A stretch of 64,000 nt of DNA from Entomortierella parvispora E1425 (GCA_020891255.1 BQFW01000006.1:558001-622000); one strand, 5' to 3'. Counted from the first letter of the stretch, positions 30,591 to 62,113 are shown. Notes: a model not told the origin generated them from the sequence alone. Made by a program: numbers and translations.

Positions 30591-33500
30591 ATGGCCAGCA
30601 TCGACAACGATCGGCGGCGAGGCAGAGGCGGCAAGTCCTTCAGGGTCAAGGTGTCACTGACTGGAAGCATCAAACAAGTCCTGGACGACTACCCAGATGG
30701 AGCGCAGATCGCCCGTGAGCTGCTTCAGAACAGTGAGGACGCAGGATCGACAATACAATGGTACCTGCTCGACCATCGTAGTCACCCTTCCCAGAGCGTC
30801 TATTGTGAAGGCATGGAAGAGTACATGGGACCTGCCCTCTTGGCTGGCAACGATTCGCTTTTCAAGGAAAGAGACTATGCTTCGTTGCAGAACTTTGGCA
30901 ACAGTGGCAAGAAAACAGACTATGAAAAGATTGGCCAAATGGGCATTGGATTCAACAGGTACAGTAATCAGAATGTTACCATTTGGCTTTGGCCCGGGAA
31001 AGACCTATCATGCCATGCCAGCAAGTGGACAAGCTCAGAACACTGACACTCACTTCACAACTCGACACAGTGTCTATCATATGACGGATTGCCCATCGTT
31101 CTTGTCGCACGATCAGTTTGTGATTTTAGAGCCGCATGAAAACGTCCTGAGAGATGGTGGAATCCGGGAAGACTTTGTTTTTGAACAAGGACTCGACCAC
31201 TATGCGGATCAGATCAGGCCCTTCACTGCTATGGATGACACCCTTGATCTTTCGAAACCCTACAACGGCACGATCTTCAGGCTCCCCCTGCGCACGCATG
31301 CCCAGGCTACCACATCTCTCGTTTCCAACAGAGCATATTCTACGCAACAGGTAATGGAATGCGGCCGTTGATTTTTTAAGGTTGCAGATCATGTGCCTTT
31401 GACCAATCATCATTTTGCTCCCCTGGCTGGGCTCCAACATCACAGGCACGAGATATGCTAATGATGCTGAAGGAAGATGCTCTGGAGTGCCTTCTTTTCC
31501 TCAAACATATCGAACGGATCCAGATTTACGAAAGAACAGACGAAAATCCAGAGCCGGTACTTCTCTTTGGTATTGAAATTGTCAATGCTGAGGAGATCCG
31601 AGCAGAGCGGACGAAATTCATGGATCGCCTCAAGAGCTACTCGGACAACTCGTCTACAACCCAGAGCTCTGGATTGGCTCTTGACTCCTCTATCCGTCCA
31701 GAGTTCAGAATCACGGACGAGGATGGCAACATCACACTTGTCACCTGGCAGGTCACCAGCATGCTAGGGGACATGGAAGAAGCACGCCAGCAAGTAGAAA
31801 AGCGGTTCAAGTGCGACACCAAAGGTCATAGATTGATTCCCTGGGTGGGGATTGCATCTCCAGTGGATCCCTCCGTCAAGATTCGCGACCCTCGTCTGTT
31901 TTGTTTCCTTCCCATCGGATACAGCACGCTATTCCCAGTCCATATCAACGGTCATTTTGCAGTCAAGCCAAGTCGTCGCGAAATCTGGACAAACCAAGGA
32001 AATGATATATCGGAGCAGAGTAATGCGCGGATCAAAGCTCATTGGAACGACTATATGATGACGGAGTTGGTTCCCAAAGTGTATGCCCGTTTCCTGGAGA
32101 ACATGGATCTCGATCACGGCGTCGATTACAGTCTTTGGCCGGAACCGTCCAATGAAAGAATTATTCCTCTCTTTCAGGGAATGCTGGATCGAGTGCTGAC
32201 AGAGGCTATCAAGGAGAAGCGAAAAATATTCTTCATGGGACCCCCAGCAAGTGAAAGATCCATGGCCTTGGAGGACTGCAACATTGCCGACCAGGTTCTT
32301 AGATTATCCACTTTACTGGTGGACATTCTTCACCAGATGACGAACGTCGTTGTGGGTTTACCTGGAAGCACCCTTGCCACTGTCAGGACGGTCACCGAGA
32401 ATCTGGGATTGCAGGCGCAGTTTTTCAACCCTGCGCATGTCAGACAGTGCTTATTGCAGCATGTGGACCTGCTCTCGGAGGTGTCGTCGTCTGCGGCCAA
32501 GTCCCAGACTTTGGAGTACTGCTCTCGGGATCGCAATGTGGAGGCACTCGAGGGGCTACCACTCTTGCCCTTGGCTGATGGCACTTGGACCAAGTTTAGC
32601 AAAGACGCAAAAGAGAGTTGGTAAGTTGCAATCCAGGCTGTGACGCATGGCAAAAATCTCTCTCTCATAGCACCAACTCACAAGATATATCTATCATCCA
32701 TTGCTCAATCTCTGTAGCTTCTTGGTCAGCGAGCAGGAATACGAAATCCTCGATTTCTCGAACGCCGGTATTATTCGGCTTAATGAGCCCTCATTCCCAT
32801 ACTGGATCATTCAGGATGAGAACTACAGCATTTTCCTCACACAAGGCATGCCTTCATCAACTTTTATTCAGAAAATACGGGAATCCTTTTCAAGTCATTA
32901 TGATAACGGCACAGACGACTTTCCTACCGACAAATGGCTCTCGCAACTTTGGGGCTATCTGGAAACACGCAAAAGTCTTATCCCTAAACTTGAAGGACTA
33001 CATTTATTTCGGATTACTGGCAACAAACTCGCTTCACTAGATAAAGCCAACCCCGTTATGGCTTTTGAAGAGAAAAGCTCCCAAACAGCCCCCATTCTCA
33101 GGGAAACCTTGGATATAATGGATCGTCAGCTTGGTTGTACTGTACTGAACGAGGGGCAACCTGGTCCTATCTCCTTGGCAGAGGATTACCTCACCATGAT
33201 CACAGATGTTCCAGGGGTCCTCTTGACTCTCTACTCAATACCGTTATCCAAGATCTCTGCTCTCAGTCAAGATCACCGCAAAGTCCTCAGTCAGTACATT
33301 CAACACCACCTGTCTCCAGACGTACGACTTCGGATGGAGCAAATAGCGTCTCTTCGAAAATTGCCCATTTTTTGCTGCTACAAAGGCACGGAGTTGGAGT
33401 CGGTGGACGAATTGGCCATTGTACATGGAAATACTCGGTATATTTGCAAAGACTTTTCATCCTCTGATCTTCCATGGATGCCGTCAGGAATTACTCTCTT

Positions 33501-36500
33501 CCGACAAGGACAAGATCTTGAGACTGTACTCCAGAAAGTCCTCAATGTTCCGGTCATGGATGAGTCTATGTATTGGATCCATATATTTCTCCACCTGTCA
33601 AAGATGCCGGAGGCGGAATGGGATTTGGTCATTCACGCGTTTGCACGAAAGTATCAATCCCACTGGGCGCACGCCTCGTTTATATGGATGCTCCCGAGCA
33701 TGAAATTCGTCAGTGTCAAAGGACCAGGCCAGGAAACTCAATCCAAACGAATCTGTCCAAAACAGGTCGTTAGCTCCGCACTGGAGAAGATGTACTTGCA
33801 GGACGAAGTCCGCTTCCCTAAAGGAATCTATGCCGAAGAACCAGTCTTGACAATGTTGCAGTCACTAGGGATGACGACTGGTTTCAATGAGACATTAGCG
33901 AAGGAGCGTATCCTGACTATTTCGGACCGCTACGCCAAAGGCGATGTTGACATCAATGCAGCCACCGCGCTCTTCGTCCAGATTCAACGACTTTGCTCGG
34001 AGCAGACATTATCGCAGGATCTCATTAATGTCATACTGCGATGCAGGTGGATCCCTGCATCATCATCCACAACGTCGCCTGGTATCAGCTTGTACATGCC
34101 TAAGGAGTGTCGACCCGCTGGCGATAGGGTGCTGTTAGGCGACACAATGCCAATAGTGGATATCACTTTCTCAAGCCCAACGTTGATACTGTCATTAGGC
34201 TGGAATTATCGACCACCACTCGAAAAGGTTTTGCAGAATCTTGCACGACTGATTGAAACCGGAAGCGATATATCAGATATCGGACAGTCACAGGAGGATT
34301 CTTTGACGGCGATCTATCGGGAACTTCTTCAGCGCATATGGGCCCCTAATGCAGTTGAGATGATCAAAGAGACGGTTGGGTCGCGAAAATGGATTCTCGT
34401 GAACAAAAGGCTGTATGCCACAGATCGCGTAGCCTTCAGTATGCCATCGTTCTTGTCACCTAGATCAGTCCAGCTTCCGTCAACCACAACAGACCCGTTA
34501 TTCAAAGCTGTGGGTGTGCCAGAGTTTGTTGAGGTGAACGATCTGCAAGGCATAATCCGGGAGCTGGCCGCTCAGTACGGAGAGGACATGTCGCTATCAG
34601 AAGAAGACGCTATGCTTGTGGCTAGGATCATGGAACATATCGCCATCAACCCTCCAGACTCGGGAGAACATGGAGATCTTTCAAAACTCCTTGTACTCAC
34701 TCAGGACTCCAAGTTGTGCAGGATCGACAAGGTCGTCTATGACGATGTTAACGCAAGTCAGGAGTCATCAGATATTTGGACCGATTCAGATGAAGAGACG
34801 TACAATCTGGCTAGTTCGAAAATCTCTCATCATGTGGCCACAAAGCTCAAGATTACAATGCTCTCGACGCAATACTGGCATGCCAAGAAAGATCCGGATC
34901 TCGAACCTTGGGCGCAGCAGGAGGATATTGTTAATCGGATCAAAACTACCTTAAACGACTATGATCCTTCCAGTATTTTCAAAGAGTTCCTTCAAAACGC
35001 AGAGGATGCAGGAGCCACCAAGTGCGTCTTCAGATTGGATGAGCGTTCATATGGAACACAGTCCATTCTTAGTCCAGAGATGGCTGCATGCCAGGGACCG
35101 GCTCTTATCATCTACAACGATGCAGAGTTCACTAAGGACGACTTTCGTGCGCTTTGCAAACTCGGTGTTGGAAACAAACGTAAGAAGAGACATCATTCAG
35201 TTTGGCTTAAATGTGCTGAACGATATTGATTATTAACTCTGCATTCGACTCTCTTGTTCATCACTAGGCGACGACACTACAAAGATCGGTCGCCATGGTC
35301 TAGGCTTTAACTCTGCTTATCACTTCACCGACGTCCCAAGTGTTGTCAGTGGAACTCATATTGGATTCTTTGATCCCCATCGAGCGTACCTGCCGAAATC
35401 TCGTACATCCAAAGGACTAGTGGCTGAAGGAGGTGTCCGTGTCGACTTCAGGAAACTCAAAGGGCCAACGTACGCCGATCAAATGGCGCCCTACAAGGGT
35501 CTGTTTGGGTGTGATATGGAGTCCCACTTCAAAGGCACCATCTTTCGATTCCCTTTGCGCACTGCAAACAGACCGGTTCTACCAAAGACTGAGTCTTCTC
35601 TAGGGGAAAGTGCCTGGACTATCGGACGTATCGGGAACATCATGTCTGACTGGCACCAGGATGTAAAGATCGCGATGCTCTTTTTGAAGAACATGAAAAC
35701 GATTGAGTTCCAAGGAGGGAGCGGCCCTTGCATAGTGACAAAGTCGGACATAACAAGGGGCACGGCCTTGGAAAGCGTCAATGCTCGGTCACCCCTTGGA
35801 ACTGCAACAGCAAGTCTCGTCAGGATTCAGTCCAATTTGGGTGGTGAAATCAGGAGCGGTCTCCACAATTGGCTTGTGTTCCAAGAATCCCAGTTTCCTA
35901 TATCTTGCCCAGCCAGCGTTGTGAATCTTGCAAAAGTCAACCGGTGGACTCCACATCGCGGAACTGCATTCCCTTTGCGCAGACCTGAACAATCAGGAGA
36001 ATCATTCAAGGAGCAGATGCAAGGACGGCTATTCATTCACTTGCCAACTCCAACAAGGACAGACACAAAGTTCCATCTGCATGGTGAATTCGCCCTTTCA
36101 TCCAATCGAAAGGGTTTAGCAGGAGGTTCTGTCAGTACAGGAGATCCTCGAGCACTATGGAACGAGGCAATGAGGAAAACGCTAATGCCGTTGCACCTGG
36201 TCAAGGCGTTTGCCGTCTTGCTCGAGTTCACCATTGCCGTCAGTCCCAAGAATACCACGCACGATTTAGAAACTGTGCAGGCGCAATATTTCCCTTATTT
36301 GCCTGCACTTGGTACCTTGGAGAAGGAAGCCATTTTGGAGGAGTCTGAGTTCTGGAAGCACACTTACAACCATAGTGTCTTTCCATGCAGAGGGGCGGGC
36401 TATCAACTGGTTGCTAAAACTGCACAAGAATCTTTCTTCATGGATGCACAATTCCTCGCGCTTTCACAGGAAGTTCAGCAAAAGGTGGTGCAACTGTTGG

Positions 36501-39500
36501 TCTCGAGTGGAAAGTATATCTGCCGATGCCCGCCGACAACGTTGAAGAAAATCAAGAAGGCGTCCACCTCCCAGCATAGAGAAGTAACGGCTGCTCTCGT
36601 TCGAAATTGTCTATCTGGACGACCCAACTTTCTACCCACCGTCATCACATCCGCAGAGGGTCGAAGCGGACTACTGGAGTATATTCTGGAGGATATTCTC
36701 AACTCAGATATCGACATTTACCCTTCGATCTCGAACCTGGCGATCATACCTTTACTCAACGGTGAATGGAAAACTCCGTGCTCGGCAGAGGATATGTACT
36801 ATACAGTCGATCCCCCCATGCGAGCACTCATCGAAGGAGACGATTATCTGATCGACATGGATCTGTTCAACACACCGACTCTGAAAAGCATCCTGAAAGC
36901 ATTTGTCAAAGACGAGCGGTTCGATGTTGAGGAGTTGGAGAGTGATCCGGAGAAATTCGCGTCAATCTTTTTCAAGGAGCGGGACCAGAGCACCTTGGAC
37001 GACTGCATCGTGGACAAAGTTTGGTCTCTGCTCGAAAACTACCTGGACCTGAGTCCCTTTGAAGAACTCCGGATAGTAAAGCCGTTGTGGGGCAGCTTCA
37101 TTAGGCTGGGCGATGTTGTATTTGGATTGACACTGGAATCCAATCAACTCTCGGATGATATCCTAGGATTGAAGAGAGTGTTGATAGATCAAGACATTGA
37201 CCTTATCCCACAATCAAGCTATCACAATCACTCTTGGATAGAAAAGCGACCCTGCCACCCTAGTAATGTTCTTAAGGCACTCTATCAAAGCAACCAATGG
37301 GAGCATACGTATGATCTCACGACGTATACGTTCACTGCCGAGGAGGCCAATATTTTACGCGGGTGGGTCTTGCGGCTCAAGCTCTCGGCCTATATCCGTG
37401 AATTCGTAGGCAAGCTTAAGATTTGGGAATCGTACAACTCAGATCCGGAGGCACCGTTGATTAGCGCTGTAGGTCACTCTTTCCCAGTAGCCTCAGGAAT
37501 GGCTGACTTGAGCATTTTTGGGAGCTTTCCCAACATTATCAAGTATCCAGGATACATGGATTGCTCTTACACTGAAATCCTGAGCAGGTTGAGCGCTCGT
37601 CCCATCCACATCAAAGAACTCCTTACCGATCATATCGTGCCAACCCTGTCATTCCAGCCTGGCGGCTTGACCACGAGGCAGAAACCCGCTTACAGGGATA
37701 TCATGGTGGCCCTCTGGGGAAACGGATTTCACAATTGCGCCCCAGGTGAACGCACGTCCTTCCTGTCATCAAGTGTATTGATTCCAAGGAGAGCTGGTGG
37801 CGGTTTCGCTAAGGGTAGTGACTTACTCCGGCCGGAGGATGGACTCTTGCAAGACTTTTATTCCGATGAGAGTGGGATGTTTCCGGACGAAACGGTTTGG
37901 CAGGGACTTCGGCAGCTTGAGAGAGGAGAAGCCTTTGGGCTTCAGACCTCGGACGACGAACTTACCGTGAGACGGTGTGCCGAAAAACTGCTGGATCAGA
38001 TCGCTCGCCTCCCAATCAATCAACGGACACTCAGTGCCACCATGACCGCATCCATTGGTAGTCCAAGACTCTATAGCCTTGCCGTGAAGCTGGTGAAACA
38101 TATTTACGTCCGAAGCCAATCTCAGGAAAATACGCCAGGAATAACGGACTGGAGTGACGACAAATGGGCAATTGTACCTGTGGAACTGACGACAGATTCA
38201 ATCCAACGCTTGTGCTTTCCGTCTGGACTACAAACGTTTATGGCATTTTCGAAACTTCGGTACAGTCGTTGGAGTGACAAAACATGGACGGTATGCGCCT
38301 ATTTTCCTGCCGATCTAGAACCCCCCGAACATTTCAAAAAGGTGTTCCCAGGGGTGAGAGGAAATGCGAACATAGTGCAATGTATACAGCACTTGCGTAA
38401 TTTGGTCACGAAATTGGCGCCTGTATGGACATCTAAAGAGCAAAAGACCATGCTCAAGATTGCACTCTTTCGATCCTATCAATCGTTCGAGGACTCGATT
38501 AACACAATCAAGGATAGCATAGCCCTTTGTTTCGAGGCAGGTTTAAAAGATGTTGCCTTTATTCTAAATGGCGATCATTTGGACCCAGCTCTGCCAGAGT
38601 CTTGGCGCAAACCTAGTCAATTGTTGTTGGATATCGAGTACGACATTGATGATCAGCAACCCGTCCATCAACGTCTGCTCGCCTACAGAAGGTTTTTGGT
38701 GGCGGTCGGCGTTCGCGAAATCAAGAAGGTCGAGGGTCACCTGGTTGAAGTTCCGCCAGGCCGTGAATTGGGAGCCTTGGAGAAGAAAATGACAGAACTG
38801 TTTCAGCAACAGGACGCAAAGATGGGCCTTATGGACGTTAAGTTTATCTTTTCCGACGACTCCAGCGTTCTCGGACGGACGACGAAATCGATTTTGGCCC
38901 ACAAGTTTGTCCTTGTTCACACTTGTCAACATTTCTCGGACAGCTTTACAGGTGCCTGGTCCGAGTTTACGACCAATGATGCCGAGGATCCAAGGCTGAC
39001 GGTCGTGGATTTGTCGAGAGCGATCGCGACAGAAGCGGAATACGAGGTCTTTTGGGGAGTGTTGTACTACTTGTACACGGATAAGTTGATTCAAACGAAC
39101 GGACCTGCTTCTGCAGCGACAGCTCCGCAAGAAGATAAGGACACTGTTGGTGAACGGGTCGAATACCTGGTGAACCTCTTGACAGTGGCAGATCTCTATC
39201 GTCTACAGCGGCTCAAGTCCTTGATTGCTGCTGCTCTCCTCCCACCCTCATCTTTTATCACCCATGGCAACGTGTTTGAGGTCCGAGAGTTTGCACGGAA
39301 TGTGGGGCAGAATGACTTGGTAGCGTACTGCTCGGCTTTTATCCACGAGAACTTTGCGCTCTTAGTGGACCGCACAAAAGACGAGATTCGACGCTGCAGG
39401 GAAGAGATTGGACATATCGAAGAAGAAGAGAAGGTTGCGCAGCGGAGTACTGTACATAATGACGAGGAGGAGGTGGAGGAAGAAGGAGAGGTGTTTGAAG

Positions 39501-39673
39501 ACTGTGCTGTCAGTGAGGAGGATAAAGCCAGCGAGGGCACTGAGAAGTTTGAGGTCGTGAACAAAGAGAAACAGCACGATCCAGCCCTTCTTAAAAGGAA
39601 GAGGGAGCTAATGGCTGAGCTGTTGAACTATACAAACAACCTCATAGAGCTGATCCCCATCTCCTGGAACTGA
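30591..39673 (+). CDS. Sacsin-repeat (2x GHKL/Hsp90-like ATPase) + C-terminal BTB protein, copy 1, 2,896 aa; exons 30591..30958, 31071..31350, 31446..32620, 32718..35179, 35268..39673
   Basis: Spliced length 8,691 nt, no stops. Repeat 1: RELLQNSEDAG, LLAGNDSLF, KIGQMGIGFNSVYHMTD, GTIFRLPLR, FPVHINGHF..SRREIW. Repeat 2: KEFLQNAEDAGA, IIYNDAEFT, KIGRHGLGFNSAYHFTD, GTIFRFPLR, FHLHGEF. BTB-like: MDVKFIF...ILAHKFVL...LYYLYTD...LLTVADLYRLQRLKSL. Confidence 0.88.
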
Positions 39674-40710
39674 AGGACATGAACCTTGAATAAACCTATT
39701 GTACGTTATTGCACAGAAGCGGAGACGAGGGAAGCTTCAGAGAGGGTCATTGTTCATTGTTGTTTGGATCTCTTGACCTCTTCAATGTCGCGGTGCTCAT
39801 GCCTATAAAGGTTCTGCAGGTGCAGGCAGATGGCAAAGCAAAAAAGCAATGATACAAACGGATTTTTTTTTTATTAATGAAGAATCTAATTGATGTGTGA
39901 ATGCAGTTGGAACGGTTGCGTCGGTGCCATGGTGTTTGTTCACTGCCGGGGGTTACTGGAGGGAAAAGGCCGAGCATTTTTGAAGTTTGCTGCTTTGAGG
40001 TTTTGGAGCCAGCTACTCGTTGCCCTGCCACCAGGGGGGGGGGGGGGATATCAAGATGTTGCCAAAAAAGAATCATCTCCTGTGCTATTTCACGGGTTCT
40101 CCTTGCGTGGTATACGTCTACGCTGCAACAGTTAAAGTGCAACGCCCAGCGTCTTGGAATAGATGTTCTTGCATCTTCTACATACGGTGCGAGCACCGTC
40201 CGTCAGTCTTTTCGCGGACATATTTTTTTTTTTGTTTTTTCAGACACAGGGGCTCTACCGCTGAAGAGCGATCGCCACGGCCAACAGGACGATGGTCAAC
40301 AAGCCGGCCTTGGTCCTGGGAGCACCTCCGTTGAACATGGCTGGACAGGTGCTGTTGCTGCAGTCAACTCTGTTGGAGAGATGATTGGCCAAGTCCTCCA
40401 GTCTTCCACTGCTGACAAAACCGTCTTTGTCCGGCATGCGTGTGCAGGAATAATGGTATCTTGTTGACGTCTGCGTCACGAACACAGAAATTAAAACTCA
40501 TCATATCTCACGCAGCTGTTGCTGCCGTTGCTATAGAGTCCGAATTGACATACGGCTCATGAGGACTGTTTGTAGATGGTGGGGTTTCGAATGAGTGAAT
40601 GAAAGAGAGATTGAGATGTCATCCCTCGGAGGCATCATGCATCAGTTTTCTTACAGCAGAAAAAAAAAAAAAAAAAAAGCCCCAAGAACCATCGTGCTGG
40701 CGACAATAAT

Positions 40711-40806
40711 GACACCTCTGACAGCTTTTGGGGTCTTGGAGAGCCCTTGCAAGCCCTTTGACCCGACATATCGTCAGTAACCTGTCGACTTTTACGGGCG
40801 GACTCT
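40711..40806. promoter_or_regulatory. Conserved non-coding block upstream of sacsin-BTB copy 2 (paired with 52307..52402)
   Basis: By eye, 6 mismatches in 96 bp between the two blocks, while neighbouring non-coding sequence aligns only patchily. The regulatory role is inferred. Confidence 0.45.
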
Positions 40807-41018
40807 AGGAATTCACGCGGAACAGGTCGCAGAGCAGCAAAGCCAAGCGACGCAGGCTCGACAAGGGCCAGGGGTGCCTTTTCGTGCAACAGGGGTGAAA
40901 AAAATACGTGATTTTGCTATGCTGTAGCCTGCAGGTGGCGCCATCTCATTTTGTCCCATGGCGAAGAACCGCACGCGCACGCGCGCTGGAAGCATTGGCG
41001 GATGGCAAAGCAAAGAAA

Positions 41019-41088
41019 GCAGAAAGAGCAGAGCAGAAAGAGCAGGGCAGAAAGAGCAGAGCAGAAAGAGCAAAGCAGAAAGAGCAAA
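41019..41088 (+). repeat. 14-bp minisatellite GCAGAAAGAGCA(G/A)(A/G) x5
   Basis: Read directly; not expanded at the homologous position upstream of copy 3. Confidence 0.85.
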
Positions 41089-41378
41089 GCAAAGCAAAAA
41101 AAAAAAAAAAAAAGTGGACAATAGATCATGCTGGACACAGCAGGGGCACTGACCGTCTATTCGTTATTTGCTTCGCTTGCCTCTTTTTTTTCCCCTCTGT
41201 GCTTCCAACTTCGCCTTCTCTTGTTTTTTCTCCTTCATCCTCTCGATCTTTTTTTCTTTTTCTCTTAACCACGTCCCTTTCTCCTCTCTCTATCTCTCTC
41301 TCTATCTCTCTCTCTCTCTCAATCACAGAGAATCAAGAAAAACACTCCCACAACTCATCCCTAGTCAAAAATCTAGCC

Positions 41379-50300: not shown

Positions 50301-50544
50301 CGATGACAGCGAAGGGTTTGAAGTGGTGGACGAGAGCAAATCTGAGGAGACGGTGGGTGATGGTGATCAGAACAGCTCAGACACGGTCGCGCAACTCGAC
50401 ATTGCTCGGGAGAGTCGAAACCAAGAGAACCAAGAAGTTGAACATCTTACCCTTGCCGAACTGAGGGAGAAGCTCAATGAACTAGAGCTGGAGTTGTCAA
50501 ACTATGAAGATCAACTTCAGGATTTTGCTAATCTCAGCACGTAA
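41379..50544 (+). CDS. Sacsin-repeat + BTB protein, copy 2, 2,926 aa; exons 41379..41764, 41869..42157, 42251..43431, 43531..45983, 46073..50544
   Basis: Spliced length 8,781 nt, in frame. Same intron positions and phases and the same GHKL and BTB motifs as copy 1. Confidence 0.88.
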
Positions 50545-50913: not shown

Positions 50914-51546
50914 ATGTCTCCCATGCTCAGGGGCCTCACTTTCAACGGTCTTCAGAAGAACCCCGTCCACTCGATCTATTGCGCCAACCATGAGCTTCTC
51001 GACTACATTTCCACCAAGTGGCACATCCCAAAGGAGGACGACATCGACACTCGGTATATACAAAGACACCGTGTTCAAAAATCTGGGTTCTCCGTTCGCG
51101 CTCTATACCGACTCGTCTGCACCTTCCCTGAGGCGGTCCATGCAGAGCCCACCGACAAGTCTGCTTGGTGGTCTACATTCACGCACAAGACCACTGGCAA
51201 GTTCTTTGGGTTTGATGATATCAAAGGACGCGTCGCGCTCCGGATCCGAATGGAAGAGTTCTACTTGCGAGATGACCAACGCAAAAACAAGGACCGAGGG
51301 AGTGTCTGGCGCGCCATGGAAGCACTGAAGAAAAGTGAGTCTTATGAGGAGATTTCAAGACCTTACTCTGAGGTTCTGCCACGGGAGTTGGTGGATCGTC
51401 TGCGTGCACCCGAGACGGAGGATCCAGAGCTGTTAAAAGAGTTGAGACAGTTTGTCGAGGACAAGGTCTTCAGTGGCACAAAAGATGCTTCGATTATGCT
51501 TATTCATTCCGTCCACATTAATATTGATTCGGTCCATGTTTCTTAA
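50914..51546 (+). CDS. Uncharacterised partner-family gene A, rearranged (internal deletion with compensating insertion, 3' end replaced); possibly a pseudogene
   Basis: Near-identical to 62515..63264 but lacks ~101 nt, has a 2-nt insertion ~50 nt downstream, and loses homology after GTCTTCAG (~51472). Confidence 0.6.
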   Translation: MSPMLRGLTFNGLQKNPVHSIYCANHELLDYISTKWHIPKEDDIDTRYIQRHRVQKSGFSVRALYRLVCTFPEAVHAEPTDKSAWWSTFTHKTTGKFFGFDDIKGRVALRIRMEEFYLRDDQRKNKDRGSVWRAMEALKKSESYEEISRPYSEVLPRELVDRLRAPETEDPELLKELRQFVEDKVFSGTKDASIMLIHSVHINIDSVHVS

Positions 51547-52965: not shown

Positions 52966-55900
52966 ATGTCCGAGAATAACAACCACTATCGCTCCGACGA
53001 CGAGGACAACGACGCTGCCGCCGATGAAAGCTTTGAGGTCACTGAACCCTTAACCCGTCGCATCGCCAGCATCCTGGGCGACTATGCCGATGGACCACAG
53101 ATTGCCCGTGAACTGTTGCAGAACAGCGAGGATGCAGTCTCCCGAAAGCAGTGGTTCTTGCTCGATCATCGCACCCATCCTTCCGAGACCGTCTTTCGAG
53201 AGGGCTTGGAAGAGTACATGGGGCCAGCTCTTCTGGCTGGAAACGACTCTTCGTTCAAGAAGGAAGATTTCGAATCCCTGAAAAGTCTTGCGGACAGTAG
53301 CAAGAAGGGCGACTATGAAAAGATTGGCCAAATGGGCATTGGCTTCAACAGGTAAAGACTGACTGCATATTACTTTTTGAGCTGAACAAGAAAGTGGAGG
53401 GCGAATGAGTCGATGACTGATTTTGGATACCATCTCCACCCATTCGAATTTGTTCATCTTCACTTTTTCTTTTAGTGTCTACCATATGACAGACTGTCCC
53501 TCCTTCCTGTCGCAAGATCAGCTAGTAATCATTGAGCCCCATGCAAAGATCTTCCACGGTCTCAACGGCGAACGTCGGGGAGGCGCTAAAACAAACTTTG
53601 TCCATAAACGTCGAGGACTCAAGCGTTACGCAGACCAAATCAAACCTTTTACAGCCTTGAACGACGACGTGGATCTGTCTGAGCCTTACGATGGTACCAT
53701 CTTCAGGTTCCCTTTGCGTACAAAGCCCTCCGATATTTCCAAGAGTGCATACTCTTCAGAACAGGTAAAAAACCACAGAGAAGCGCCCGGTGAGCGTGCG
53801 CTGAAATGGATTGATGATGGTGACTGATTCTCCATTTTGCCACCAAAATTTGAATAGGCAAGAGACATGCTGATGGCATTCAAGGAAGAGGCGCTCGAGT
53901 GTCTGCTCTTCCTTACCAATGTCGAGCAGATCTCGATCTATGAGAGAAAGGATGGCGATGCAAAGCCAACCCTGCTTTTTGACATTCAGATCACGAACGC
54001 AGAAGAGGTCCGAGCCGAACGAAAAAAATTCACGGATGGATTTAAGGATCGGCTAGACCTTCAATATACAAACCAACACGAAAATGAGTCCACTCTAGAC
54101 TACTCCATCAGACCCGAATTCAAGATGACGGACGAGAATGGCCGTGTCACCTCGGAAATCTGGCAGATCACCAGCATGATGGGAAGTGCCGTAGAGGCCT
54201 ATCGACAAATGACGGAACGGACAGAGGCCGATCCCACTGCGCACAGGCTTATCCCTTGGGTCGGTATTGCAGCCCCGGTGGATCCCAAGATCAAGATCAA
54301 AAACTCTCGCCTGTTTTGTTTCCTGCCCATTAGGAATAGCAACTTGTTCCCTGTCCATATCAACGGTCATTTTGCAGTGAAGCAGAGTCGTCGAGAGATC
54401 TGGACCAACCAAGACAAAGATCTTCCTTCCAAGAGCGAGGCGCGTCTGAAAGCTCATTGGAACGAGTACATGATTACCGAACTAATTCCGAAGGTGTATG
54501 CTCGCTTCTTGGAGAACATGGGTCTCGATCATGGTGTCAAGTATGGCCTGTGGCCTGTGCCAAATAAGTCTTCCGACGAGAGTTATGCTCTCATGCGTGA
54601 GATGACGGCCCGGGTGCTTGTACAGGCTATCAAGGAACAGCGAAAAATATTCTTCGTTGGACCTTCGTCAAGTCAAGCAATGACCTTCGAGAATTGCCAC
54701 ATTGTGGATCATACTCTTGGAAATTCCACCTTACTAGTGGATATCCTACATCAGATGGTTAGCCTGGTAGTGGGCTTGCCTGGAGACATTGTCGCCTCTC
54801 TCAAATCGGTCGCCGAAACCTTGGGATTACAAGAGCGACTCCTCGACCCTGCTCGGGTCAGACAGTGCTTATTGCAGCATGTGGACCTATTCTCGGAGGT
54901 ATCCTCACCGGCCAAGTCCCAGACTTTGGAGTACTGCTTCATAGATCAAGATGTCGAGGCTCTTGAAGGACTACCAATCTTACCAATGGCCGATGGCTCA
55001 TGGGCCAAGTTTAGCGGAGAAGCGAAGGACAGTCGGTAAGCTGTAGTCCTGGTAATCTCCAGTGGTCTTTTTTTTTCCTCAAGAGTGCTGACTGACAAAT
55101 ATCATTGGTCACTCGGTTGTATTTCTGTAGCTTTTTGGTCAGCAACCAGGAATACGAGATCCTTGCTTTCTCCAAAGATGGTCTTATCCGCCTCAATGAA
55201 CCCGCATTCCCGTACTCTATCATTGAAAACCCAGCATTCAGCATTTTCCTCACACAAGGGATTCCCCGCTCTTCCTTTGTACAAAAAATACGCGGATCGT
55301 TTTCTACCCACTATCGTGACGGTGCCGGTAGCTTTCCTACCGACAAATGGCTCTCGCAACTTTGGGGCTATCTCGTAACACGCGAAAGTCTTATCCCTCA
55401 GCTCGAAGGGCTGCATTTGCTGAGGATTACTGGCAACAGACTCGCTCCACTAGACGAAAACAATCATGTTTTGGTCCTCGACGGACAGGGGTCTCAAACA
55501 GCACCCATTCTTGAGAAGACCTTGACTATCATGGCCAATCAGCTTGGATGTTTTGTGCTGGCGGGGGAACAACACGGTCCTATCACTTTAGCAGGAAACT
55601 ATCTCACAAATATCACGAATGTCCCAGGGGTCCTTTCAATTCTCGACTCAGTCCCATCTTTCAAGTTTGCTTCTCTTGATCAGATACATCGCCAAGAGCT
55701 TAGTCGGTATATACAACGTTACCTATCGTCAAGAGAGCATTTATGGCAAAATCAACAGGCGGCTCTTCGGAAATTGCCGATTTTTTGCGGCTACAAAGAC
55801 GCGGAGCTGAAGTCAGTTGACATGTTGGACAGGGAGTACGGAGGTACCTGGTATATTTGCAGTGGCTTTTCATCTTCTGAGCTTCCGTGGATGCCGCTGG

Positions 55901-58900
55901 GAATTACCCTTTTCCGACAAGGGCAAGATCTTGAGATGGTGCTGCAACGAATCCTGTTAATTCCGAGTATGAACGAACCTTTGTATTGGACCCGTTTGCT
56001 TCCCAATCTGCCAGAAGTACCAGAGTCAGAGTGGGACAAGATCATTTTGGCCTTTGCACAGAAATTTCGTTCCCACTCGGACCACCATTCATTTACATCG
56101 ATCCTCCGGAATCTGGCATTCGTCAGCGTCAGAGGGCCGGGTCTGGGATCTCAGACCAGACGGATCCATCCACAACATGTCATCAGCCCTAGCCTGGAGA
56201 TGCTGTATCTACCAGATGATGTTTTCTTCCCGAAAGGAATCTATACCGAAGGCCCAATTTTGACAATGCTGCAGTCACTGGGAATGACGACTACGTTCAG
56301 CGAGGAAATTGCTATGGAGCGCATCCAGACCATCTCTAGATGCAACCAGTGGGACACCTCTGTTAATCTGGCTGCGACTGCTCTTCTTGATCAGATACGG
56401 TCAGAGAATCGATTTTCTCCAAACCTAACTGATATAATACAGAGTCATCGGTGGATTCCTGGATCGATGTCCTTCGATCCCAACAACATCAGCCTGTACA
56501 TGCCGGGAGAGTGCCGGCCTTTCGATGACAGGGTATTGCTGGGAGACACAATGCCTGCCGTGGATATCACTTTCCCAAGCCCAGCGCTGAAAAAGGCGTT
56601 CGGCTGGGATCAGCGACCTCCACTTGACAAGGTTCTTCTACATCTTACACAACTGATTGAGGCTGGATGCGAGCAATCGGAAATCGAGGAGACACAGGAG
56701 ACCTCTTTGAAGGCCATTTATAAAGAACTCCTTTGGCGCATTCGTTATTCAGCAGCGCTTGAAACGATCAAGAAGGCAGTTGGGCTACGCAAATGGATCC
56801 TCGTGAACAAAAAGTTGTATGCTACCGATCGAGTTGCCTTCAGCATGCCGTCGTTCCTGGCCCCAAGATCAGTTGAGATTCCGCCCATTGGATTTGATGT
56901 CTTATTCAGAGCTATGGGTGTGCCAGAGTCAGTGGAAGCGAACGATCTGCAGGGCATACTCCGCGAACTGACTGCACAATATGATGAGGACACTCCGCTG
57001 TCAGAGGAGGACGCTCTGCTTGCGACTAGGATTTTAGAACATATTGCTACTACTCCACCAAACTCTGGACAACACGGGGATCTTTCAGAGCTCCTTGTAC
57101 TCACTCAGGACTCTAAGTTGTGCAGGATCGACAAGGTTGTCTATGACGATATGAACGCAAGTCAGGAGGCCTCGGAGACTTTGAACTATTCCGATGAAGA
57201 GACATACATCACGGCCAGCTCGAAAATCTCTCATCATGTGGCCACGAAGCTCAAGATCACAATGCTCTCGACACAAAACTGGCATGCCAAGAAAGACCCC
57301 GATCTCGAACCTTGGGCGCAGCAGGAAGATATCGTGGATCGGATTAGAAACATCCTAAACGACTATGATCCTTCCAGTATTTTCAAAGAGTTCCTTCAAA
57401 ACGCAGAGGATGCAGGAGCCACCAAGTGCGTCTTCAGATTGGATGAGCGCTCATATGGAACACAGTCCATTCTTAGTCCAGAGATGGCTGCATGCCAGGG
57501 ACCGGCTCTTATCATCTACAACGATGCAGAGTTCACTAAGGACGACTTTCGTGCGCTTTGCAAACTCGGTGTTGGAAACAAACGTAAGAAGAGACATCAT
57601 TCAGTTTGGCTTAAATGTGCTGAACGATATTGATTATTAACCCTACATTCGACTCTCTTGTTCATCACTAGGCGACGACACTACAAAGATCGGTCGCCAT
57701 GGTCTAGGCTTTAACTCTGCTTATCACTTCACCGATGTCCCAAGTGTTGTCAGTGGAACTCATATTGGATTCTTTGATCCCCATCGAGCGTACCTGCCGA
57801 AATCTCGTACATCCAAAGGACTGGTGGCTGAAGGAGGTGTCCGTGTCGACTTCAGGAAACTCAAAGGGCCAACGTACGCCGATCAAATGGCGCCCTACAA
57901 GGGTCTGTTTGGGTGTGATATGGAGTCCCACTTCAAAGGCACCATCTTTCGATTCCCTTTGCGCACTGCAAACAGACCGGTCCTACCAAAGATTGAGTCT
58001 TCTCTAGGGGAAAGTGCCTGGACTATCGGACGTATCGGGAGTATCATGTCTGACTGGCACCAGGATGTGAAAATCACGATGCTCTTTTTGAAAAACATGA
58101 AAACGATCGAGCTCCAAGGAGGAGAGCATCCTTGTACTGTGTCCAAGTCGGACATAACAGAGGGCTCAGTCTTGGAGGCCGTAAACACTCGGTTGCCGAA
58201 GGAATCGAGAACAACCAGCCTCATCAATATTCTGTTCAGCTTGGAAAATGGAATTAGGTCCAAGAATCGAGAGTGGCTTGTGTTCCAAGAATCTCAGTTT
58301 CCTACATCTTGTCCTGCCAGCATTGTAAATCTTGCGAAGGAATACCGGTGGACTCCGCATCGCGGAACCGCATTTCCACTGGATAAAATTGCAGATAACA
58401 CCAGGGAGATACCGCAAGGACGACTGTTCACACACTTGCCAACTCCTATCAGGACAGACACAAAGTTCCATCTGCATGGAGGATTTGCACTGTTATCCAA
58501 TCGGAAAGGTCTGTCGGGGGGGTCCGCCAGCACAGGAGATCACACAGCGCGGTGGAACGAGACATTGAGAAAGACAGTGATGCCATTGCATCTGGCCAAG
58601 GCGCTTGCTGTCTTACTTGCGTATATCATCAGCGTCAGCCCCAAGAAAACCACCCACGATTTGGATACTGCGGAGAAACAATACTACACCTATTTACCTA
58701 TGCTAGCCACCTTAGAGAGGGAGGCCATATTGGACGAGTCTGAGTTCTGGAGACACGCATACAACCGCAGAGTCTTTCCTTGCAGAGGGCTAGGTTATCA
58801 GCTGCTACCCTCGTCCGTCCAAGGATCTGTTTTCACAAATGAAGTGTTCCTCAAGCTTCCGCAAGACGCTATTCAGAAGGTCGTGCAACTATTGGTCTCT

Positions 58901-61900
58901 CGCGGGAATCGTGTCTGCAAGTACCCACCATTATATTTGAAGAAGGTCAAGGACGCATCCGCCTCGCAGTATAACGAAATATCACCTGACCTTGTTTGGA
59001 ACTGCCTCTCTGAACAACCCAACTTCCTAACAAGGATCAAGTCTTCAGAGGGCCGAGGCGCGTTTTTGGAGTATATTTTAGAGGACATTCTCAACCCTGA
59101 TGTCGACATTTACCTTTCTGTCTCGCATCTGGCGATTATACCTTTGATGAATGGTGAATGGAGGACTCCATCCTCAGCAGGAGCCACGTACTTTACGGCT
59201 TCAGCCAGTGTACGTGCTCTTATCAAAGGAAAGGACTCCCTCATTGATGAGAACATATTCAATGCTACCTCAAAACTACAGGAAATCTTGGACAAAATGG
59301 TGACAGACGGACGGTACAATGTAAAGATGATAACACCGGAGCACATCACGGCAGTATTCAACAAGGAAAACCCTGGACCCTTGCACGACAGCCTCTTGGA
59401 TAGAGTTTGGTCTTTGCTCCATAGCTTTGATGATCTAAGTCCTTTTGGAAGCCTCTGTATTCTCAGAACCCTTTCAGGCGTTCTTAAGCCTCTAAACTCT
59501 TCGAAACAGGGATTGATTCTGGAGTCCTATTCCACCCCTATAGCGTGTGAGGTGTTGAGGGGATTATTGGAACGCAAGGGTGTGTCAATCTTCTCCGCTT
59601 CCAGCCATCATAACCACTCTGGAGCGCCCAAGGACCGACCTTTTAGTCCCGCAAATGTATTCAAAGAGCTGGCAAGATCCAGAGGGTGGGAAAGAATGTA
59701 TAATTTCACAACTGAAGAAGCCGCCATATTGCGCACATGGGTCATGGCAGATGAAGTCCCACAGGAGCTCTGGAGCTTTGTGGGTGGGTTCAGGATATGG
59801 AACAACCACGGTTCGCGAATGTCAATGATCAGCGCAAGCGGGTCGGTCTTCCAGGTAGCTCCGGGAGACGCCAACTTCAGCAACATTGGGCGATTCCCTA
59901 ATATTATTGATTTCCAGGGGCAGAACATGGACACCACCAAGGACCAAATCTTGACCCAGCTGGGTGCTCAACGTTTTGATATTCGGTCAATCCTGTTGGA
60001 TTATGTCGTTCCGGCTCTGCAGGCCCAATCTGGCGACATGACTGAAGAACAAAAAGTAGCATACAGGAATATTTTGGCGTCTATGTGGAACACAACTGGC
60101 GATCGTCCATCCTTGTCAGGGTCCCCGTTGATTCCAAGGAAGTCAGGAGGTTTTACTGAGGGAAGAACTCTGTTTAATCCTAATGACGACCTCTTGCGAG
60201 CCTTGTTCAATGACCACGATGAGATGTTTCCAGACGAAATAGTTTGGGCAGGACTTCGAGAACTTCACCTTGGTGGTCCTTTTGGTCTTCAAACCTCGAA
60301 TGACAGCCTCACCATAAGACGATGCGCCGAGGAATTGCTAGCCAAGATTTCTAGTCTGCCTATTGAGCGGCGAATTCTGAGTGCAACCATGACTTCGGCC
60401 ACTAGCTCTCCAGAACTCCATGGTATAGCTGTGCAACTTGTAAAGAAGATCTACGCCCTGGACACCTCTCATCTGAGTATTTCAGAATTGACGAACTGGG
60501 GCGACGAGAGATGGGCTATTGTCCCCGCAGAGCTGACAAGGGATCCAATCCAGCTCTTGAAGGCCCCGCTCGGGCTGCCTACATATATGCCATTCTCGAA
60601 ACTTCGATGCAAGGATCAGCAACTCGAAACATGGACTGAATGTGCGTATTTCCCATCTGGTCTCGAGCCCCCTGCTCACTTCCTGGCGGTCCATCCAGGT
60701 GCGACAAATCTCTCCACTAGAGACTTTGGTCAACACTTCCGCACATTGGTTACAGAGTTAGCCCCGTCTTGGTCATCGATGAATCATCAGCTGATGCTGA
60801 AAAGCTCCCTCTTCAAACTCTACGAGAGGTTTGAAAACGACGTGCAACAGGCCAGCTCAAGAATCAGGCTAGTTGATTTCTTCAACACACACTTGAGAGG
60901 CATCTCCTTTATTATGAATGGTGATCATTTGGACCCGACTCTACCAGAGTCCTGGCGAAGGCCCAATCAACTGATCTTGGACATTGAACACGACTTGGAA
61001 CATCAGCAGCCGGTCCATTCGAAACTGCTCGTCTACAGAAACTTTTTGGTGGCGGTCGGTGTGCGAGAGATCAAAAAGGTTGAGGGCCACACTGTTATCG
61101 TTCCACCAGGCCGTGAACTTGGACTCGTGGAAAAGAAAATGGCAGAGTCGTTTGAGAGACAAGACTCGACAATGGGCTTTATGGACGTTAAGTTTACCTT
61201 CCCAGACCCTTCAATCGGATCAGAACCAGCGACGAAATCCATCTTGGCCCACAGGTTTTTCCTTGCCCACACATGCGACTATTTCTCGAAACTTTTTGCT
61301 GGTGCCTGGTCCAAGTTTGCCCTCTATGATGCAAATGACCAAGGGTTGACAGTTGTGGACATGTCAAAAGCTATGGACAGCCAGGCCGCATACGATGTCT
61401 TTTGGGGGGTGCTGTACTACTTGTACACGGACAAGCTAGTACTGACCAATGGCCCCTCTTCGGCGGCTGACGCAAGTCAGGAAGGAGCCGTGGAGAGTGA
61501 GAACACCAACCGCAAGGACCGAGCGCTCTATTTGGGTGAGCTCTTAAAAGCAGCAAATCTCTACTGTCTAGACAGACTCATGTCTTTAATTGCCAGGTCC
61601 CTCATGCCCTCATTGATCGACATTGACACTGCGTTTAACATCCGGGAGTATGCTCGAGAAACCTCGCAGGCGGACTTGATTGCATGTTGTACAGCGTATA
61701 TCCGCGATAATCACTTGATTATGGGGGAGCAAATCAGAGTGTATGTCAACCGTATCACCACTAATATTGATCACGTCAAGGAGGATATTGAACGCGTCAA
61801 GGCGGGTATTGGGCACGTAGAAGAAGAAGGTGATCCAGGATTAGACAACAGCTATGAGAACTATGCTGGCGAGGAAAGTGACGGCAGTGACGGGTTTGAA

Positions 61901-62113
61901 GTCGTGGGTGAGAGCACATCTGAGGAGACGGTGAGTGATGGTGATCAGAGCAGCTCTGACACGGTCGCCCAGCTCGATATTGCCCATAAACCACAAATGC
62001 AGGACCAAGAACTAGACCGTCCTACTCTTGCGGGATTGATGGAGGAACTCGAGGAGCTGGAGGCACATTTGTCCAACTACGAAGACCAACTTCGGGACTT
62101 TGCTGATCTTTGA
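52966..62113 (+). CDS. Sacsin-repeat + BTB protein, copy 3, 2,915 aa; exons 52966..53351, 53476..53764, 53858..55035, 55131..57583, 57672..62113
   Basis: Spliced length 8,748 nt, in frame. Same intron positions and motifs as copies 1 and 2. Confidence 0.88.

What the first reader, a model, noticed from the sequence alone, without database searches (positions are those of the whole stretch)
30591..62113. Tandem array of three intact ~2,900-aa double-sacsin-ATPase/BTB genes: candidate undescribed conflict or quality-control system
Seen: three co-oriented 5-exon genes with identical intron positions, all with uninterrupted frames. Each has two sacsin-type repeats that keep the GHKL N-box Glu/Asn (ELLQN, EFLQN), the ND and GxxGxGFNS ATP-lid motifs and the downstream HING/HGxF module, followed by ~1,000 divergent residues and BTB. 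Known: sacsin repeats are Hsp90-like nucleotide-binding modules; human sacsin ends in J and HEPN domains, not BTB; tandem, intact, fast-diverging large NTPase genes are typical of immune and allorecognition loci such as fungal NLR/het genes. Inference: a sensor or chaperone ATPase family under diversification, possibly detecting foreign or misfolded proteins. I recall no characterised protein with this architecture but could not search databases.
Basis: partly seen in the sequence, partly recalled or inferred. Interest (0 to 1): 0.88.

Follow-up and report, generated by a model that had tools for sequence, protein, structure and literature searches.

The report
Tandem fungal sacsin-BTB ATPase genes
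Three neighbouring, intact genes of the soil fungus Entomortierella parvispora each encode a ~2,900-residue protein made of two complete sacsin-type ATPase repeats ending in a BTB domain. This uncharacterised family is conserved across Mortierella-like and mycorrhizal fungi, probably links a sacsin-type ATPase to ubiquitin ligation, and shows no sign of immune-type diversification.

Summary
Three co-oriented five-exon genes (2,896, 2,926 and 2,915 aa) lie at 30591-39673, 41379-50544 and 52966-62113. Their introns sit at identical positions, and my models equal the GenBank proteins annotated "sacsin" in Entomortierella parvispora.

Each protein is two complete sacsin repeats, a BTB with a BACK/3-box-like extension, and an acidic tail. 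The "~1,000 divergent residues" are simply the rest of repeat 2. ATP-binding and catalytic motifs are intact in all six ATPase heads.

The architecture is not unique to this locus. I found it in every Mortierellomycota genus represented among the hits (1 to at least 4 copies per genome), in Glomeromycota and Endogone, and in Tulasnella and Mycena. I found no paper describing it.

The array is a lineage-specific triplication; the Gryganskiella locus fetched holds one copy. The duplication is old (dS 0.66 to ~1.2) and under purifying selection throughout (dN/dS about 0.22, near 1 only in the acidic tail). A 713-bp gene-conversion tract links copies 1 and 3.

Best reading: BTB-dimerised GHKL-type ATPases acting as Cul3 substrate adaptors in protein quality control. 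This is inferred, not shown. The immune or allorecognition reading is weakly supported. Other first-stage notes of this scan cover parts of the same stretch. Verdict: new variant of a known kind, moderate interest.

The parts
30591..39673 (+). g1: five-exon gene, 2,896 aa (public protein P0153, annotated 'sacsin'). Exons 30591-30958, 31071-31350, 31446-32620, 32718-35179, 35268-39673.
   Evidence: identical to the public protein
41379..50544 (+). g2: five-exon gene, 2,926 aa (P0152). Exons 41379-41764, 41869-42157, 42251-43431, 43531-45983, 46073-50544.
52966..62113 (+). g3: five-exon gene, 2,915 aa (P0001 = GJJ71852.1). Exons 52966-53351, 53476-53764, 53858-55035, 55131-57583, 57672-62113.
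30630..34524 (+). g1 sacsin repeat 1: GHKL-type ATPase head with N-box Glu43 at 30717-30719, followed by the transducer and solenoid.
   Evidence: Pfam SACS; motifs; repeat limits transferred from the hhalign of g3 and mapped
34900..38707 (+). g1 sacsin repeat 2 (N-box Glu1364 at 34984-34986). It includes the '~1,000 divergent residues' of the finding.
38756..39406 (+). g1 BTB with BACK/3-box-like helical extension.
   Evidence: Pfam BTB; limits by alignment to the g3 model
39407..39670 (+). g1 acidic tail ending in a terminal amphipathic helix.
41436..45328 (+). g2 sacsin repeat 1 (Glu49 at 41523-41525).
45704..49473 (+). g2 sacsin repeat 2 (Glu1372 at 45788-45790).
49501..50181 (+). g2 BTB with BACK-like extension.
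53023..56931 (+). g3 sacsin repeat 1 (Glu49 at 53110-53112).
57304..61072 (+). g3 sacsin repeat 2 (Glu1371 at 57388-57390). Its ATPase head matches the human sacsin crystal structure 5V44 at E 3.5e-44.
61103..61765 (+). g3 BTB with BACK/3-box-like extension. The AlphaFold2 model has mean pLDDT 89. The best structural matches are the BTB(+3-box/BACK) domains of KEAP1, KLHL11, SPOP and NPR1.
34952..35664 (+). Gene-conversion tract in g1. It differs from g3 57356-58068 at 9 of 713 bases, against about 75% identity in the flanks. It spans intron 4 and the start of the second ATPase head.
57356..58068 (+). The partner of the conversion tract in g3.
50914..51546 (+). Small intronless gene downstream of g2 (P0279, 210 aa). 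It was co-duplicated with the g2/g3 unit. It is not a conserved partner of the family.
62515..63264 (+). Small intronless gene downstream of g3 (P0266, 249 aa). A further copy starts at 63569.

Best explanation
The locus is a lineage-specific tandem triplication, (g1,(g2,g3)), of a conserved fungal gene family. Each product has two full sacsin repeats, each a GHKL/Hsp90-like ATPase head plus transducer and helical solenoid. These are followed by a BTB domain with a BACK/3-box-like extension and an acidic tail with a terminal helix.

Shown:
- the architecture;
- intact nucleotide-binding and catalytic motifs in all six ATPase heads;
- a confidently modelled BTB of the class found in Cul3 substrate adaptors;
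- purifying selection on all three copies;
- conservation of the family across early-diverging fungi.

Inferred:
- The BTB provides the constitutive C-terminal dimer interface that GHKL clamp ATPases need. HEPN is thought to do this in human sacsin, and the nuclease is predicted to do it in Tiamat.
- Through the BTB and 3-box the protein docks onto Cul3. The ATP-driven sacsin repeats would then select or remodel client proteins and hand them to a cullin-RING ubiquitin ligase, giving a protein quality-control role.
- The three copies are retained, sub-functionalised paralogs rather than a diversifying immune repertoire.
For: - Gene models and their identity to the annotated proteins.
- SACS twice and BTB once in each protein. 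BTB was detected in 54 of 54 family members, best E 1.8e-18.
- The head of repeat 2 matches the human sacsin structure 5V44 at E 3.5e-44.
- Each repeat matches Tiamat TmtA profiles at E 1e-49 over the first 350-560 profile positions.
- Internal duplication of the whole ~1,200-residue repeat.
- N-box Glu/Asn, ND, GxGxGFNS and GTIFRxPLR are kept in all heads. An Arg pair lies 350-354 residues after the first N-box Glu, and repeat 2 keeps an R-K pair after HLHGxF at a similar distance. In human sacsin the corresponding Glu116-Arg474 spacing is 358 (PMC9880540).
- C-terminal model: pLDDT 89, pTM 0.81.
- Foldseek matches to KEAP1, KLHL11, SPOP and NPR1 BTB(+3-box/BACK) cover 200-240 residues. ESM-atlas matches to BTB+BACK_BPM_SPOP clusters have rmsd about 3 A over about 170 residues.
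- The phi-x-E Cul3-contact position holds a nearly invariant Trp (49 of 54) followed by Ala or Ser. It reads W-S-E in g1 and the classical M-S/A-E in Endogone and Acaulospora.
- Other sacsin-family lineages independently carry ubiquitin-system modules: plant 3xSACS+RING proteins and the N-terminal ubiquitin-like domain of human sacsin.
- dN/dS is about 0.22 overall and below 0.7 in every 100-codon window.
- Family tree and copy numbers.
Against: - No experiment or expression data exist for any member; no RNA run was listed.
- Cul3 binding is not shown. The Glu of phi-x-E is Lys in g2 and g3 and is variable across the family.
- The BTB Pfam score in the three window proteins is only 19-24 bits.
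- BTB domains also act as plain dimerisers or transcriptional co-regulators.
- No heat-shock elements lie in the promoters.
- ATP binding by sacsin heads has itself been debated (PMC9880540).
Confidence: 0.45

Rival explanations
1. The proteins are chaperone or remodelling ATPases in which the BTB only dimerises them and no ubiquitin ligase is involved. The BTB would supply the constitutive C-terminal dimer of a GHKL clamp, and the proteins would act like human sacsin on large assemblies or organelles.
For: - GHKL ATPases work as dimers, and the Tiamat preprint predicts dimerisation through its C-terminal domain.
- BTB is a dimerisation fold. The profile also matches the non-Cul3 BTBs of BCL6 and ZBTB proteins.
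- The phi-x-E Glu is not conserved.
- A conserved terminal amphipathic helix could add a coiled-coil contact.
Against: - The best structural matches are Cul3-adaptor BTBs with a 3-box/BACK, and helices equivalent to the 3-box are modelled with high confidence.
- Other sacsin-family lineages repeatedly carry ubiquitin-system domains.
Confidence: 0.28
2. This is a conflict or immune sensor. A eukaryotic descendant of Tiamat-like defence ATPases would detect foreign or aberrant molecules from viruses, endobacteria or non-self nuclei. Tandem paralogs would widen its specificity, and BTB-Cul3 would be the effector arm.
For: - Both repeats are homologous to the phage-defence protein TmtA.
- Fungal Tiamat-like proteins fused to HET domains are reported.
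- Duplications are repeated and lineage-specific (E. parvispora x3 plus a dispersed fourth copy, E. beljakovae x3, Linnemannia subfamilies).
- Gene conversion has occurred between copies.
- Between two isolates the 3' third of g1 differs by 9-10% in nucleotides, against 4.4% for the 5' part of g2.
- The lineages carrying the family (Mortierellomycota, Glomeromycota, Endogonales) are, by general knowledge, those known to host endobacteria.
Against: - dN/dS is about 0.22, with no window above 1 outside the disordered tail.
- The duplicates are old (dS 0.66-1.2).
- There is no hypervariable repeat region, nuclease, HET, TIR or other death-type effector.
- One copy each was listed for three M. alpina strains and Lobosporangium, and the Gryganskiella locus fetched holds one copy.
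- Orthologs are conserved across the phylum.
- The array order appears to be kept in a second isolate.
Confidence: 0.12
3. The proteins are nuclear or chromatin-associated, or nucleic-acid-directed, ATPases like MORC or NO VEIN. The BTB would act as a co-repressor or oligomerisation module, as in BTB-ZF proteins or NPR1.
For: - Sacsin-family members often carry nucleic-acid-related end domains, and NOV is nuclear.
- NPR1 and BCL6 are among the BTB matches.
Against: - Pfam finds no DNA- or RNA-binding domain, nuclease or zinc finger.
- There is no conserved nuclear localisation signal; I checked this only by inspecting the tails.
Confidence: 0.1

Closest known systems
Human/animal sacsin (SACS; three SIRPT/SRR repeats, PDB 5V44-5V47 for the Hsp90-like head)
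   Same: - The same repeat supradomain: ATPase head plus transducer plus solenoid.
- The head of repeat 2 matches 5V44 at E 3.5e-44, with N-box, lid and GTxFRFPLR motifs aligned.
- A candidate catalytic Arg sits at the same spacing.
- Homology continues at least 300-400 residues beyond the head.
   Different: - Two repeats instead of three.
- No N-terminal ubiquitin-like domain, no XPCB, and no J or HEPN domain.
- It ends instead in a BTB with BACK-like helices and an acidic tail.
- About 2,900 aa against 4,579 aa.
- Fungal, multi-copy and tandem.
Plant sacsin-like RING proteins (Arabidopsis AT5G23110 type, ~4,750 aa; 3xSACS + C3HC4 RING)
   Same: - After other fungi, these and cnidarian sacsin-like proteins are the best full-length matches: about 25-27% identity, E about 1e-180.
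- The logic is the same: sacsin repeats joined to a ubiquitin-ligase module at the C-terminus.
   Different: - RING (an E3 catalytic adaptor) rather than BTB (a Cul3 substrate adaptor).
- Three repeats rather than two.
- They are also uncharacterised.
Bacterial anti-phage Tiamat (TmtA) and plant NO VEIN
   Same: Each repeat matches PADLOC TmtA profiles at E 1e-49 and 7e-49 over the ATPase, transducer and first part of the solenoid. Pfam's SACS domain covers the same clade of proteins.
   Different: - A single repeat ending in a PD-(D/E)xK NOV_C nuclease, which is absent here.
- No defence context and no nuclease in the fungal proteins.
BTB-BACK Cul3 substrate adaptors (SPOP/BPM, KLHL, KEAP1)
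   Same: - The C-terminal 220 residues model as a BTB plus 3-box/BACK-like helices. Best matches are KEAP1, KLHL11 and SPOP (E 7e-6 to 1e-4; TM by target 0.65-0.72 for BTB+3-box constructs).
- A hydrophobic residue sits at the phi-x-E position.
   Different: - The BTB lies at the C-terminal end of a giant ATPase rather than N-terminal to a Kelch or MATH substrate-binding domain.
- Sequence identity is only 14-19%.
- The phi-x-E Glu is not conserved.
- The BTB carries a long loop insert.

Membership tests
Sacsin-repeat (SIRPT/SRR) protein family | Hsp90-like GHKL ATPase head of the SACS type (Pfam PF25794) | tested here: met
   Two SACS matches per protein; E 3.9e-140 for g3. phmmer to the human sacsin structure 5V44 gives E 3.5e-44.
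Sacsin-repeat (SIRPT/SRR) protein family | The head is followed by a long conserved transducer/solenoid region, so the whole ~1,200-residue unit repeats | tested here: met
   hhalign matches residues 20-1218 to 1343-2569, probability 100, E 7e-98, 1,106 aligned columns. Animal and plant sacsins match 300-400 residues downstream of the head.
Sacsin-repeat (SIRPT/SRR) protein family | Catalytic and ATP-binding residues retained: N-box Glu/Asn, lid Gly motif, catalytic-loop Arg | tested here: met
   ELLQNSEDA / EFLQNAEDA, GxGxGFNS, and HINGHF..SRR or HLHGxF..NRK are present in all six heads. The residue roles come from PMC9880540. Enzymatic activity was not tested.
Sacsin orthologs proper (human SACS type) | [quoted passage not shown] | tested here: not met
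   Pfam finds only SACS and BTB. The GenBank name 'sacsin' is a family-level label, not orthology.
Tiamat / NO VEIN | C-terminal NOV_C PD-(D/E)xK nuclease after a single ATPase-solenoid unit | tested here: not met
   Only the N-terminal 350-560 positions of the TmtA profiles match. No NOV_C (PF13020) hit appears in Pfam scans.
BTB/POZ domain proteins | BTB fold | tested here: met
   Pfam BTB in 54 of 54 family members, best E 1.8e-18, and 19-24 bits in the window's proteins. The family profile hits SPOP, KLHL and BCL6 BTB structures at E 5e-9 to 1e-5. The AlphaFold2 model with pLDDT 89 matches BTB structures.
Cul3 substrate adaptors | 3-box/BACK helices after the BTB, and the phi-x-E Cul3-contact motif | tested here: inconclusive
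   Helices after the BTB superpose on the 3-box/BACK of SPOP, KLHL11 and KEAP1. At the phi position Trp is nearly invariant, but the Glu is present in g1 only; it is Lys in g2 and g3. The position was assigned by reading the HMMER alignment to SPOP against my recollection of the motif.
Cul3 substrate adaptors | Physical binding to Cul3 and substrate ubiquitylation | not testable with these tools
   This needs a multimer structure prediction or biochemistry.
Fungal NLR/het-type allorecognition or immune loci | Diversifying selection or hypervariable recognition repeats, presence/absence polymorphism, and a death or HET effector | tested here: not met
   dN/dS is 0.22, and no window exceeds 1 except the disordered tail. 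No HET, TIR or nuclease domain is present. A second isolate holds orthologs of g1 and g2 on abutting contigs. Only three paralogs and one other isolate were available, so site-level selection and polymorphism remain poorly sampled.

The most novel reading that the evidence does not exclude
The fungal sacsin-BTB proteins are ATP-gated sensors descended from Tiamat-like defence ATPases, in which the nuclease effector has been replaced by a Cul3-recruiting BTB. Recognition of a foreign or aberrant target (mycovirus, endobacterial effector or non-self protein) would then trigger its ubiquitylation. On this reading the paralog arrays in endobacteria-hosting Mucoromycota broaden target range.
Probability: 0.1. 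Interest if true: 0.8.

Novelty: new variant of a known kind. Interest (0 to 1): 0.42.

Why it matters
Sacsin is a human disease protein whose mechanism is still unclear. In 2026 its repeat was linked to the bacterial defence ATPase Tiamat and to plant NO VEIN, with the idea that one ATPase-solenoid module is combined with interchangeable end domains.

A phylum-wide fungal family that ends in a Cul3-adaptor-type BTB adds a new end domain to that list. Together with the plant RING version and the ubiquitin-like domain of human sacsin, it points to a recurrent coupling of sacsin repeats to the ubiquitin system.

Mortierella species are culturable and, to my knowledge, M. alpina can be transformed. 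The proteins are also smaller than human sacsin. The family could therefore serve as a tractable model for what a sacsin repeat does. The tandem array itself is an ordinary retained gene duplication.

Tried and rejected
1. Immune-type diversification. Nei-Gojobori dN/dS in 100-codon and 50-codon windows found nothing above 1 outside the acidic tail.

2. A 'two-gene module' of sacsin-BTB plus the small downstream gene (another first-stage note).
   - The small gene follows g2 and g3 but not g1.
   - It is absent from the loci fetched around the Gryganskiella and Haplosporangium homologs and the dispersed E. parvispora paralog P0154. The L. exigua locus fetched around a small-gene homolog holds no sacsin-BTB gene.
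   - It belongs to an independent, itself tandem-prone Mortierellomycota family.
   - The apparent adjacency of locus tags in L. exigua is most likely an artefact of contig ordering: the two genes lie on contigs of different length.

3. Heat-shock regulation. The only HSE-like triplets lie inside coding sequence, and the count is no higher than chance.

4. Expression. No RNA run was listed.

5. Otubain fusion in Modicella (P0208) as independent support for a ubiquitin link. A complete otubain domain follows the BTB on a short contig. This could be a merged gene model, so I did not use it as evidence.

6. The LIR-like acidic FEVV motif in the tails. It occurs only in g1-g3 and is not conserved in the family.

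7. Strain comparison. Contigs of a second isolate show 4-10% nucleotide difference, but only counts were available. Without the contig sequences, and with only alignable intergenic DNA as a yardstick, no between-isolate dN/dS could be derived.

Full report
**1. What is there**

Open frames and GT..AG introns give three co-oriented five-exon genes:
- g1 at 30591-39673, 2,896 aa;
- g2 at 41379-50544, 2,926 aa;
- g3 at 52966-62113, 2,915 aa.

The four introns (88-124 nt) sit at homologous positions, and no frame is interrupted. My translations equal three public proteins exactly: P0153, P0152 and P0001 (GJJ71852.1). All are annotated 'sacsin' on one 2.44-Mb contig of Entomortierella parvispora, Mortierellomycota.

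**2. Architecture**

Pfam finds the sacsin ATPase domain (SACS, PF25794) twice and BTB (PF00651) once in each protein.

A profile-profile comparison of the two halves of the family alignment matches residues 20-1218 to residues 1343-2569 (probability 100, E 7e-98, 1,106 columns). The '~1,000 divergent residues' after the second ATPase are therefore the remainder of a second complete sacsin repeat: head, transducer and solenoid.

Further support for the repeat assignment:
- The head of repeat 2 aligns to the crystal structure of the human sacsin Hsp90-like domain (5V44) at E 3.5e-44.
- Each repeat matches the PADLOC profiles of the phage-defence protein Tiamat (TmtA) at E about 1e-49, over only the first 350-560 profile positions. 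No nuclease part matches.
- All six heads keep the N-box Glu/Asn (ELLQNSEDA, EFLQNAEDA), the ND and GxGxGFNS lid motifs and GTIFRxPLR.
- Repeat 1 keeps HINGHF..SRR, with the Arg pair 350-354 residues after the N-box Glu. Repeat 2 keeps HLHGxF..NRK at a similar distance. In human sacsin the corresponding Glu116 and proposed catalytic Arg474 are 358 residues apart (PMC9880540).

**3. The C-terminal end**

I modelled g3 residues 2330-2800 with a 54-sequence family alignment. The model has mean pLDDT 89.4 and pTM 0.81.
- Foldseek against the PDB and Swiss-Prot models returns BTB domains of Cul3 substrate adaptors over 200-240 residues. These are KEAP1, KLHL11 BTB-BACK, SPOP BTB/3-box, plant BPM and NPR1. 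TM by target is 0.65-0.72 for BTB+3-box constructs.
- The ESM atlas returns BTB+BACK_BPM_SPOP clusters at rmsd about 3 A over about 170 residues.
- The family profile hits SPOP, KLHL and BCL6 BTB sequences at E 5e-9 to 1e-5. Pfam BTB is found in 54 of 54 members, best E 1.8e-18.
- At the position of the phi-x-E Cul3-contact motif, Trp is nearly invariant (49 of 54). It reads W-S-E in g1, W-S-K in g2 and g3, and M-S/A-E in Endogone and Acaulospora.
- After the BTB comes an acidic linker of variable length and a conserved terminal helix of the form ..ELxxLEENLxEL.

**4. Distribution**

An exhaustive HMMER search with the C-terminal 1,191 residues of g1 found 33 representatives at E below 1e-30. 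A word-indexed search with g3 found about 70 full-length or partial relatives of the same architecture.

Members occur in:
- every Mortierellomycota genus represented among the hits: Mortierella, Linnemannia, Podila, Haplosporangium, Gamsiella, Lobosporangium, Benniella, Gryganskiella, Modicella and Entomortierella;
- Glomeromycota: Gigaspora, Dentiscutata, Cetraspora, Racocetra, Acaulospora and Funneliformis;
- Endogone;
- the basidiomycetes Tulasnella and Mycena.

Sources name them 'hypothetical protein' or 'BTB domain-containing protein'. The next best matches are cnidarian sacsin-like proteins, plant 3xSACS+RING proteins and animal sacsins with HEPN.

Listed copies per genome run from one (three M. 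alpina strains and Lobosporangium in the hit list; the Gryganskiella locus fetched) to at least four (Mortierella sp. 14UC, L. zychae). These are lower bounds, because only 120 of 278 hits were listed.

No paper in the library combines sacsin with BTB in fungi. Two October 2026 preprints describe the sacsin/Tiamat/NOV clade and its swappable end domains but do not mention BTB.

**5. History of the array**

A FastTree of 59 full-length members (SH-like local supports, no bootstrap) puts g2 and g3 together, g1 as their sister, and the Gryganskiella gene as sister to all three (support 100). The other E. parvispora paralog, P0198, sits in a separate deep clade with Podila. The Gryganskiella locus holds a single copy with the same exon breaks.

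A fourth member of the array's clade, P0154, lies on another contig. It has a clean in-frame loss of about 850 residues of repeat 2 but keeps both heads and the BTB.

| Pair | Protein identity | dS | dN/dS |
|---|---|---|---|
| g2-g3 | 75% | 0.66 | 0.22 |
| g1-g2 | 60% | about 1.25 | 0.22 |
| g1-g3 | 60% | about 1.17 | 0.24 |

Every 100-codon window with a measurable dS is below 0.7. Fifty-codon windows reach about 1 only in the disordered acidic tail.

One tract, g1 34952-35664 against g3 57356-58068, differs at 9 of 713 bases including intron 4. The flanks are about 75% identical, so this is gene conversion.

**6. Second isolate**

Contigs of a second sample carrying the same organism label hold the 3' part of g1 plus its downstream spacer at about 90% identity. 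They hold the 5' part of g2 at about 95.6%. The two contigs abut at a low-complexity stretch, so the g1-g2 order appears conserved while the sequences differ appreciably. No contig spans the junction itself. I could not turn these counts into a selection estimate.

**7. Neighbours**

A small intronless gene follows g2 and g3, and further copies follow g3, but none follows g1. Its family is confined to Mortierellomycota among the hits, has no Pfam domain and is itself often tandem. It is not adjacent to sacsin-BTB genes in the four other loci I fetched. It is best read as a co-duplicated neighbour, not part of a system.

**8. Interpretation**

Membership of the sacsin-repeat family is firm. Orthology to human sacsin is not: there is no J, HEPN or ubiquitin-like domain. 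The proteins are also not Tiamat or NOV, because they lack the nuclease.

The most economical mechanism follows from two points.
- GHKL ATPases act as dimers with a constitutive C-terminal interface. BTB is a dimerisation fold placed exactly there.
- This BTB resembles Cul3-adaptor BTBs with a 3-box. Other lineages attach RING (plants) or ubiquitin-like (vertebrates) modules to the same repeats.

I therefore favour a dimeric ATP-driven client-binding machine that works as a Cul3 substrate adaptor in protein quality control (about 0.45). A dimeriser-only variant is the main rival (about 0.28).

As a lead only: human sacsin and the BTB-Kelch Cul3 adaptor gigaxonin both control neurofilament turnover (PMC10758125).

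The immune or allorecognition reading keeps some probability (about 0.1). It is supported by the homology to Tiamat, the repeated lineage-specific duplications and the divergence between isolates. The selection pattern, the age of the duplicates and the conservation of the family argue against it.

**9. Verdict**

It is a new variant of a known kind, a sacsin-repeat protein with a BTB end. The array itself is an ordinary retained tandem duplication with one gene-conversion tract.

Noticed in passing
window 50914-51546, 62515-63264, 63569-64000: A tandem family of small intronless genes of about 210-250 aa with no Pfam domain, found only in Mortierellomycota among the hits. It is often tandem in other species too. 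One copy was co-duplicated with the g2/g3 unit, but the gene is not a conserved neighbour of sacsin-BTB genes elsewhere.
   Followed up: partly
L003:10001-16299 (E. parvispora, another contig): P0154 is a fourth paralog of the array's clade, 77% identical to g1 over the first 640 residues. It has a clean in-frame deletion of about 850 residues of repeat 2: g3 residues 1534 and 2385 are contiguous at L003 14916/14923. It keeps both ATPase heads and the BTB, making it a natural 'mini' version.
   Followed up: partly
P0208 (Modicella reniformis, 8.3-kb contig): In the annotated protein a complete otubain deubiquitinase domain (PF10275, residues 1851-2087) follows the BTB. I did not resolve whether this is a real fusion or two merged gene models.
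   Followed up: no
window 39407-39670, 50182-50541, 61766-62110 (tails of g1-g3): The acidic tails carry an acid-flanked F-E-V-V motif that resembles an Atg8/LC3-interacting motif. It is present only in the three array copies. The terminal helix ..ELxxLEENLxEL, by contrast, is conserved across Mortierellomycota.
   Followed up: partly
window 40648-41331: Low-complexity A/T-rich and CT-rich stretches upstream of g2, where assembled contigs of all runs break. About 300 bp of the g2 and g3 upstream regions are 82% identical, which suggests a shared promoter.
   Followed up: no
model m5ab4295c1c11 residues 1-394 (g3 2330-2723): In the ESM atlas, an Ascomycota cluster of ~590-aa BTB proteins matches the last sub-domain of the sacsin repeat together with the BTB (TM 0.47). 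This sub-domain+BTB cassette may also exist without the ATPase repeats.
   Followed up: no
window 10736-13312 (-), 24516-26831 (+): Ordinary flanking genes: a leucyl-tRNA synthetase fragment and a RasGEF-domain protein. Nothing here suggests a defence island.
   Followed up: no
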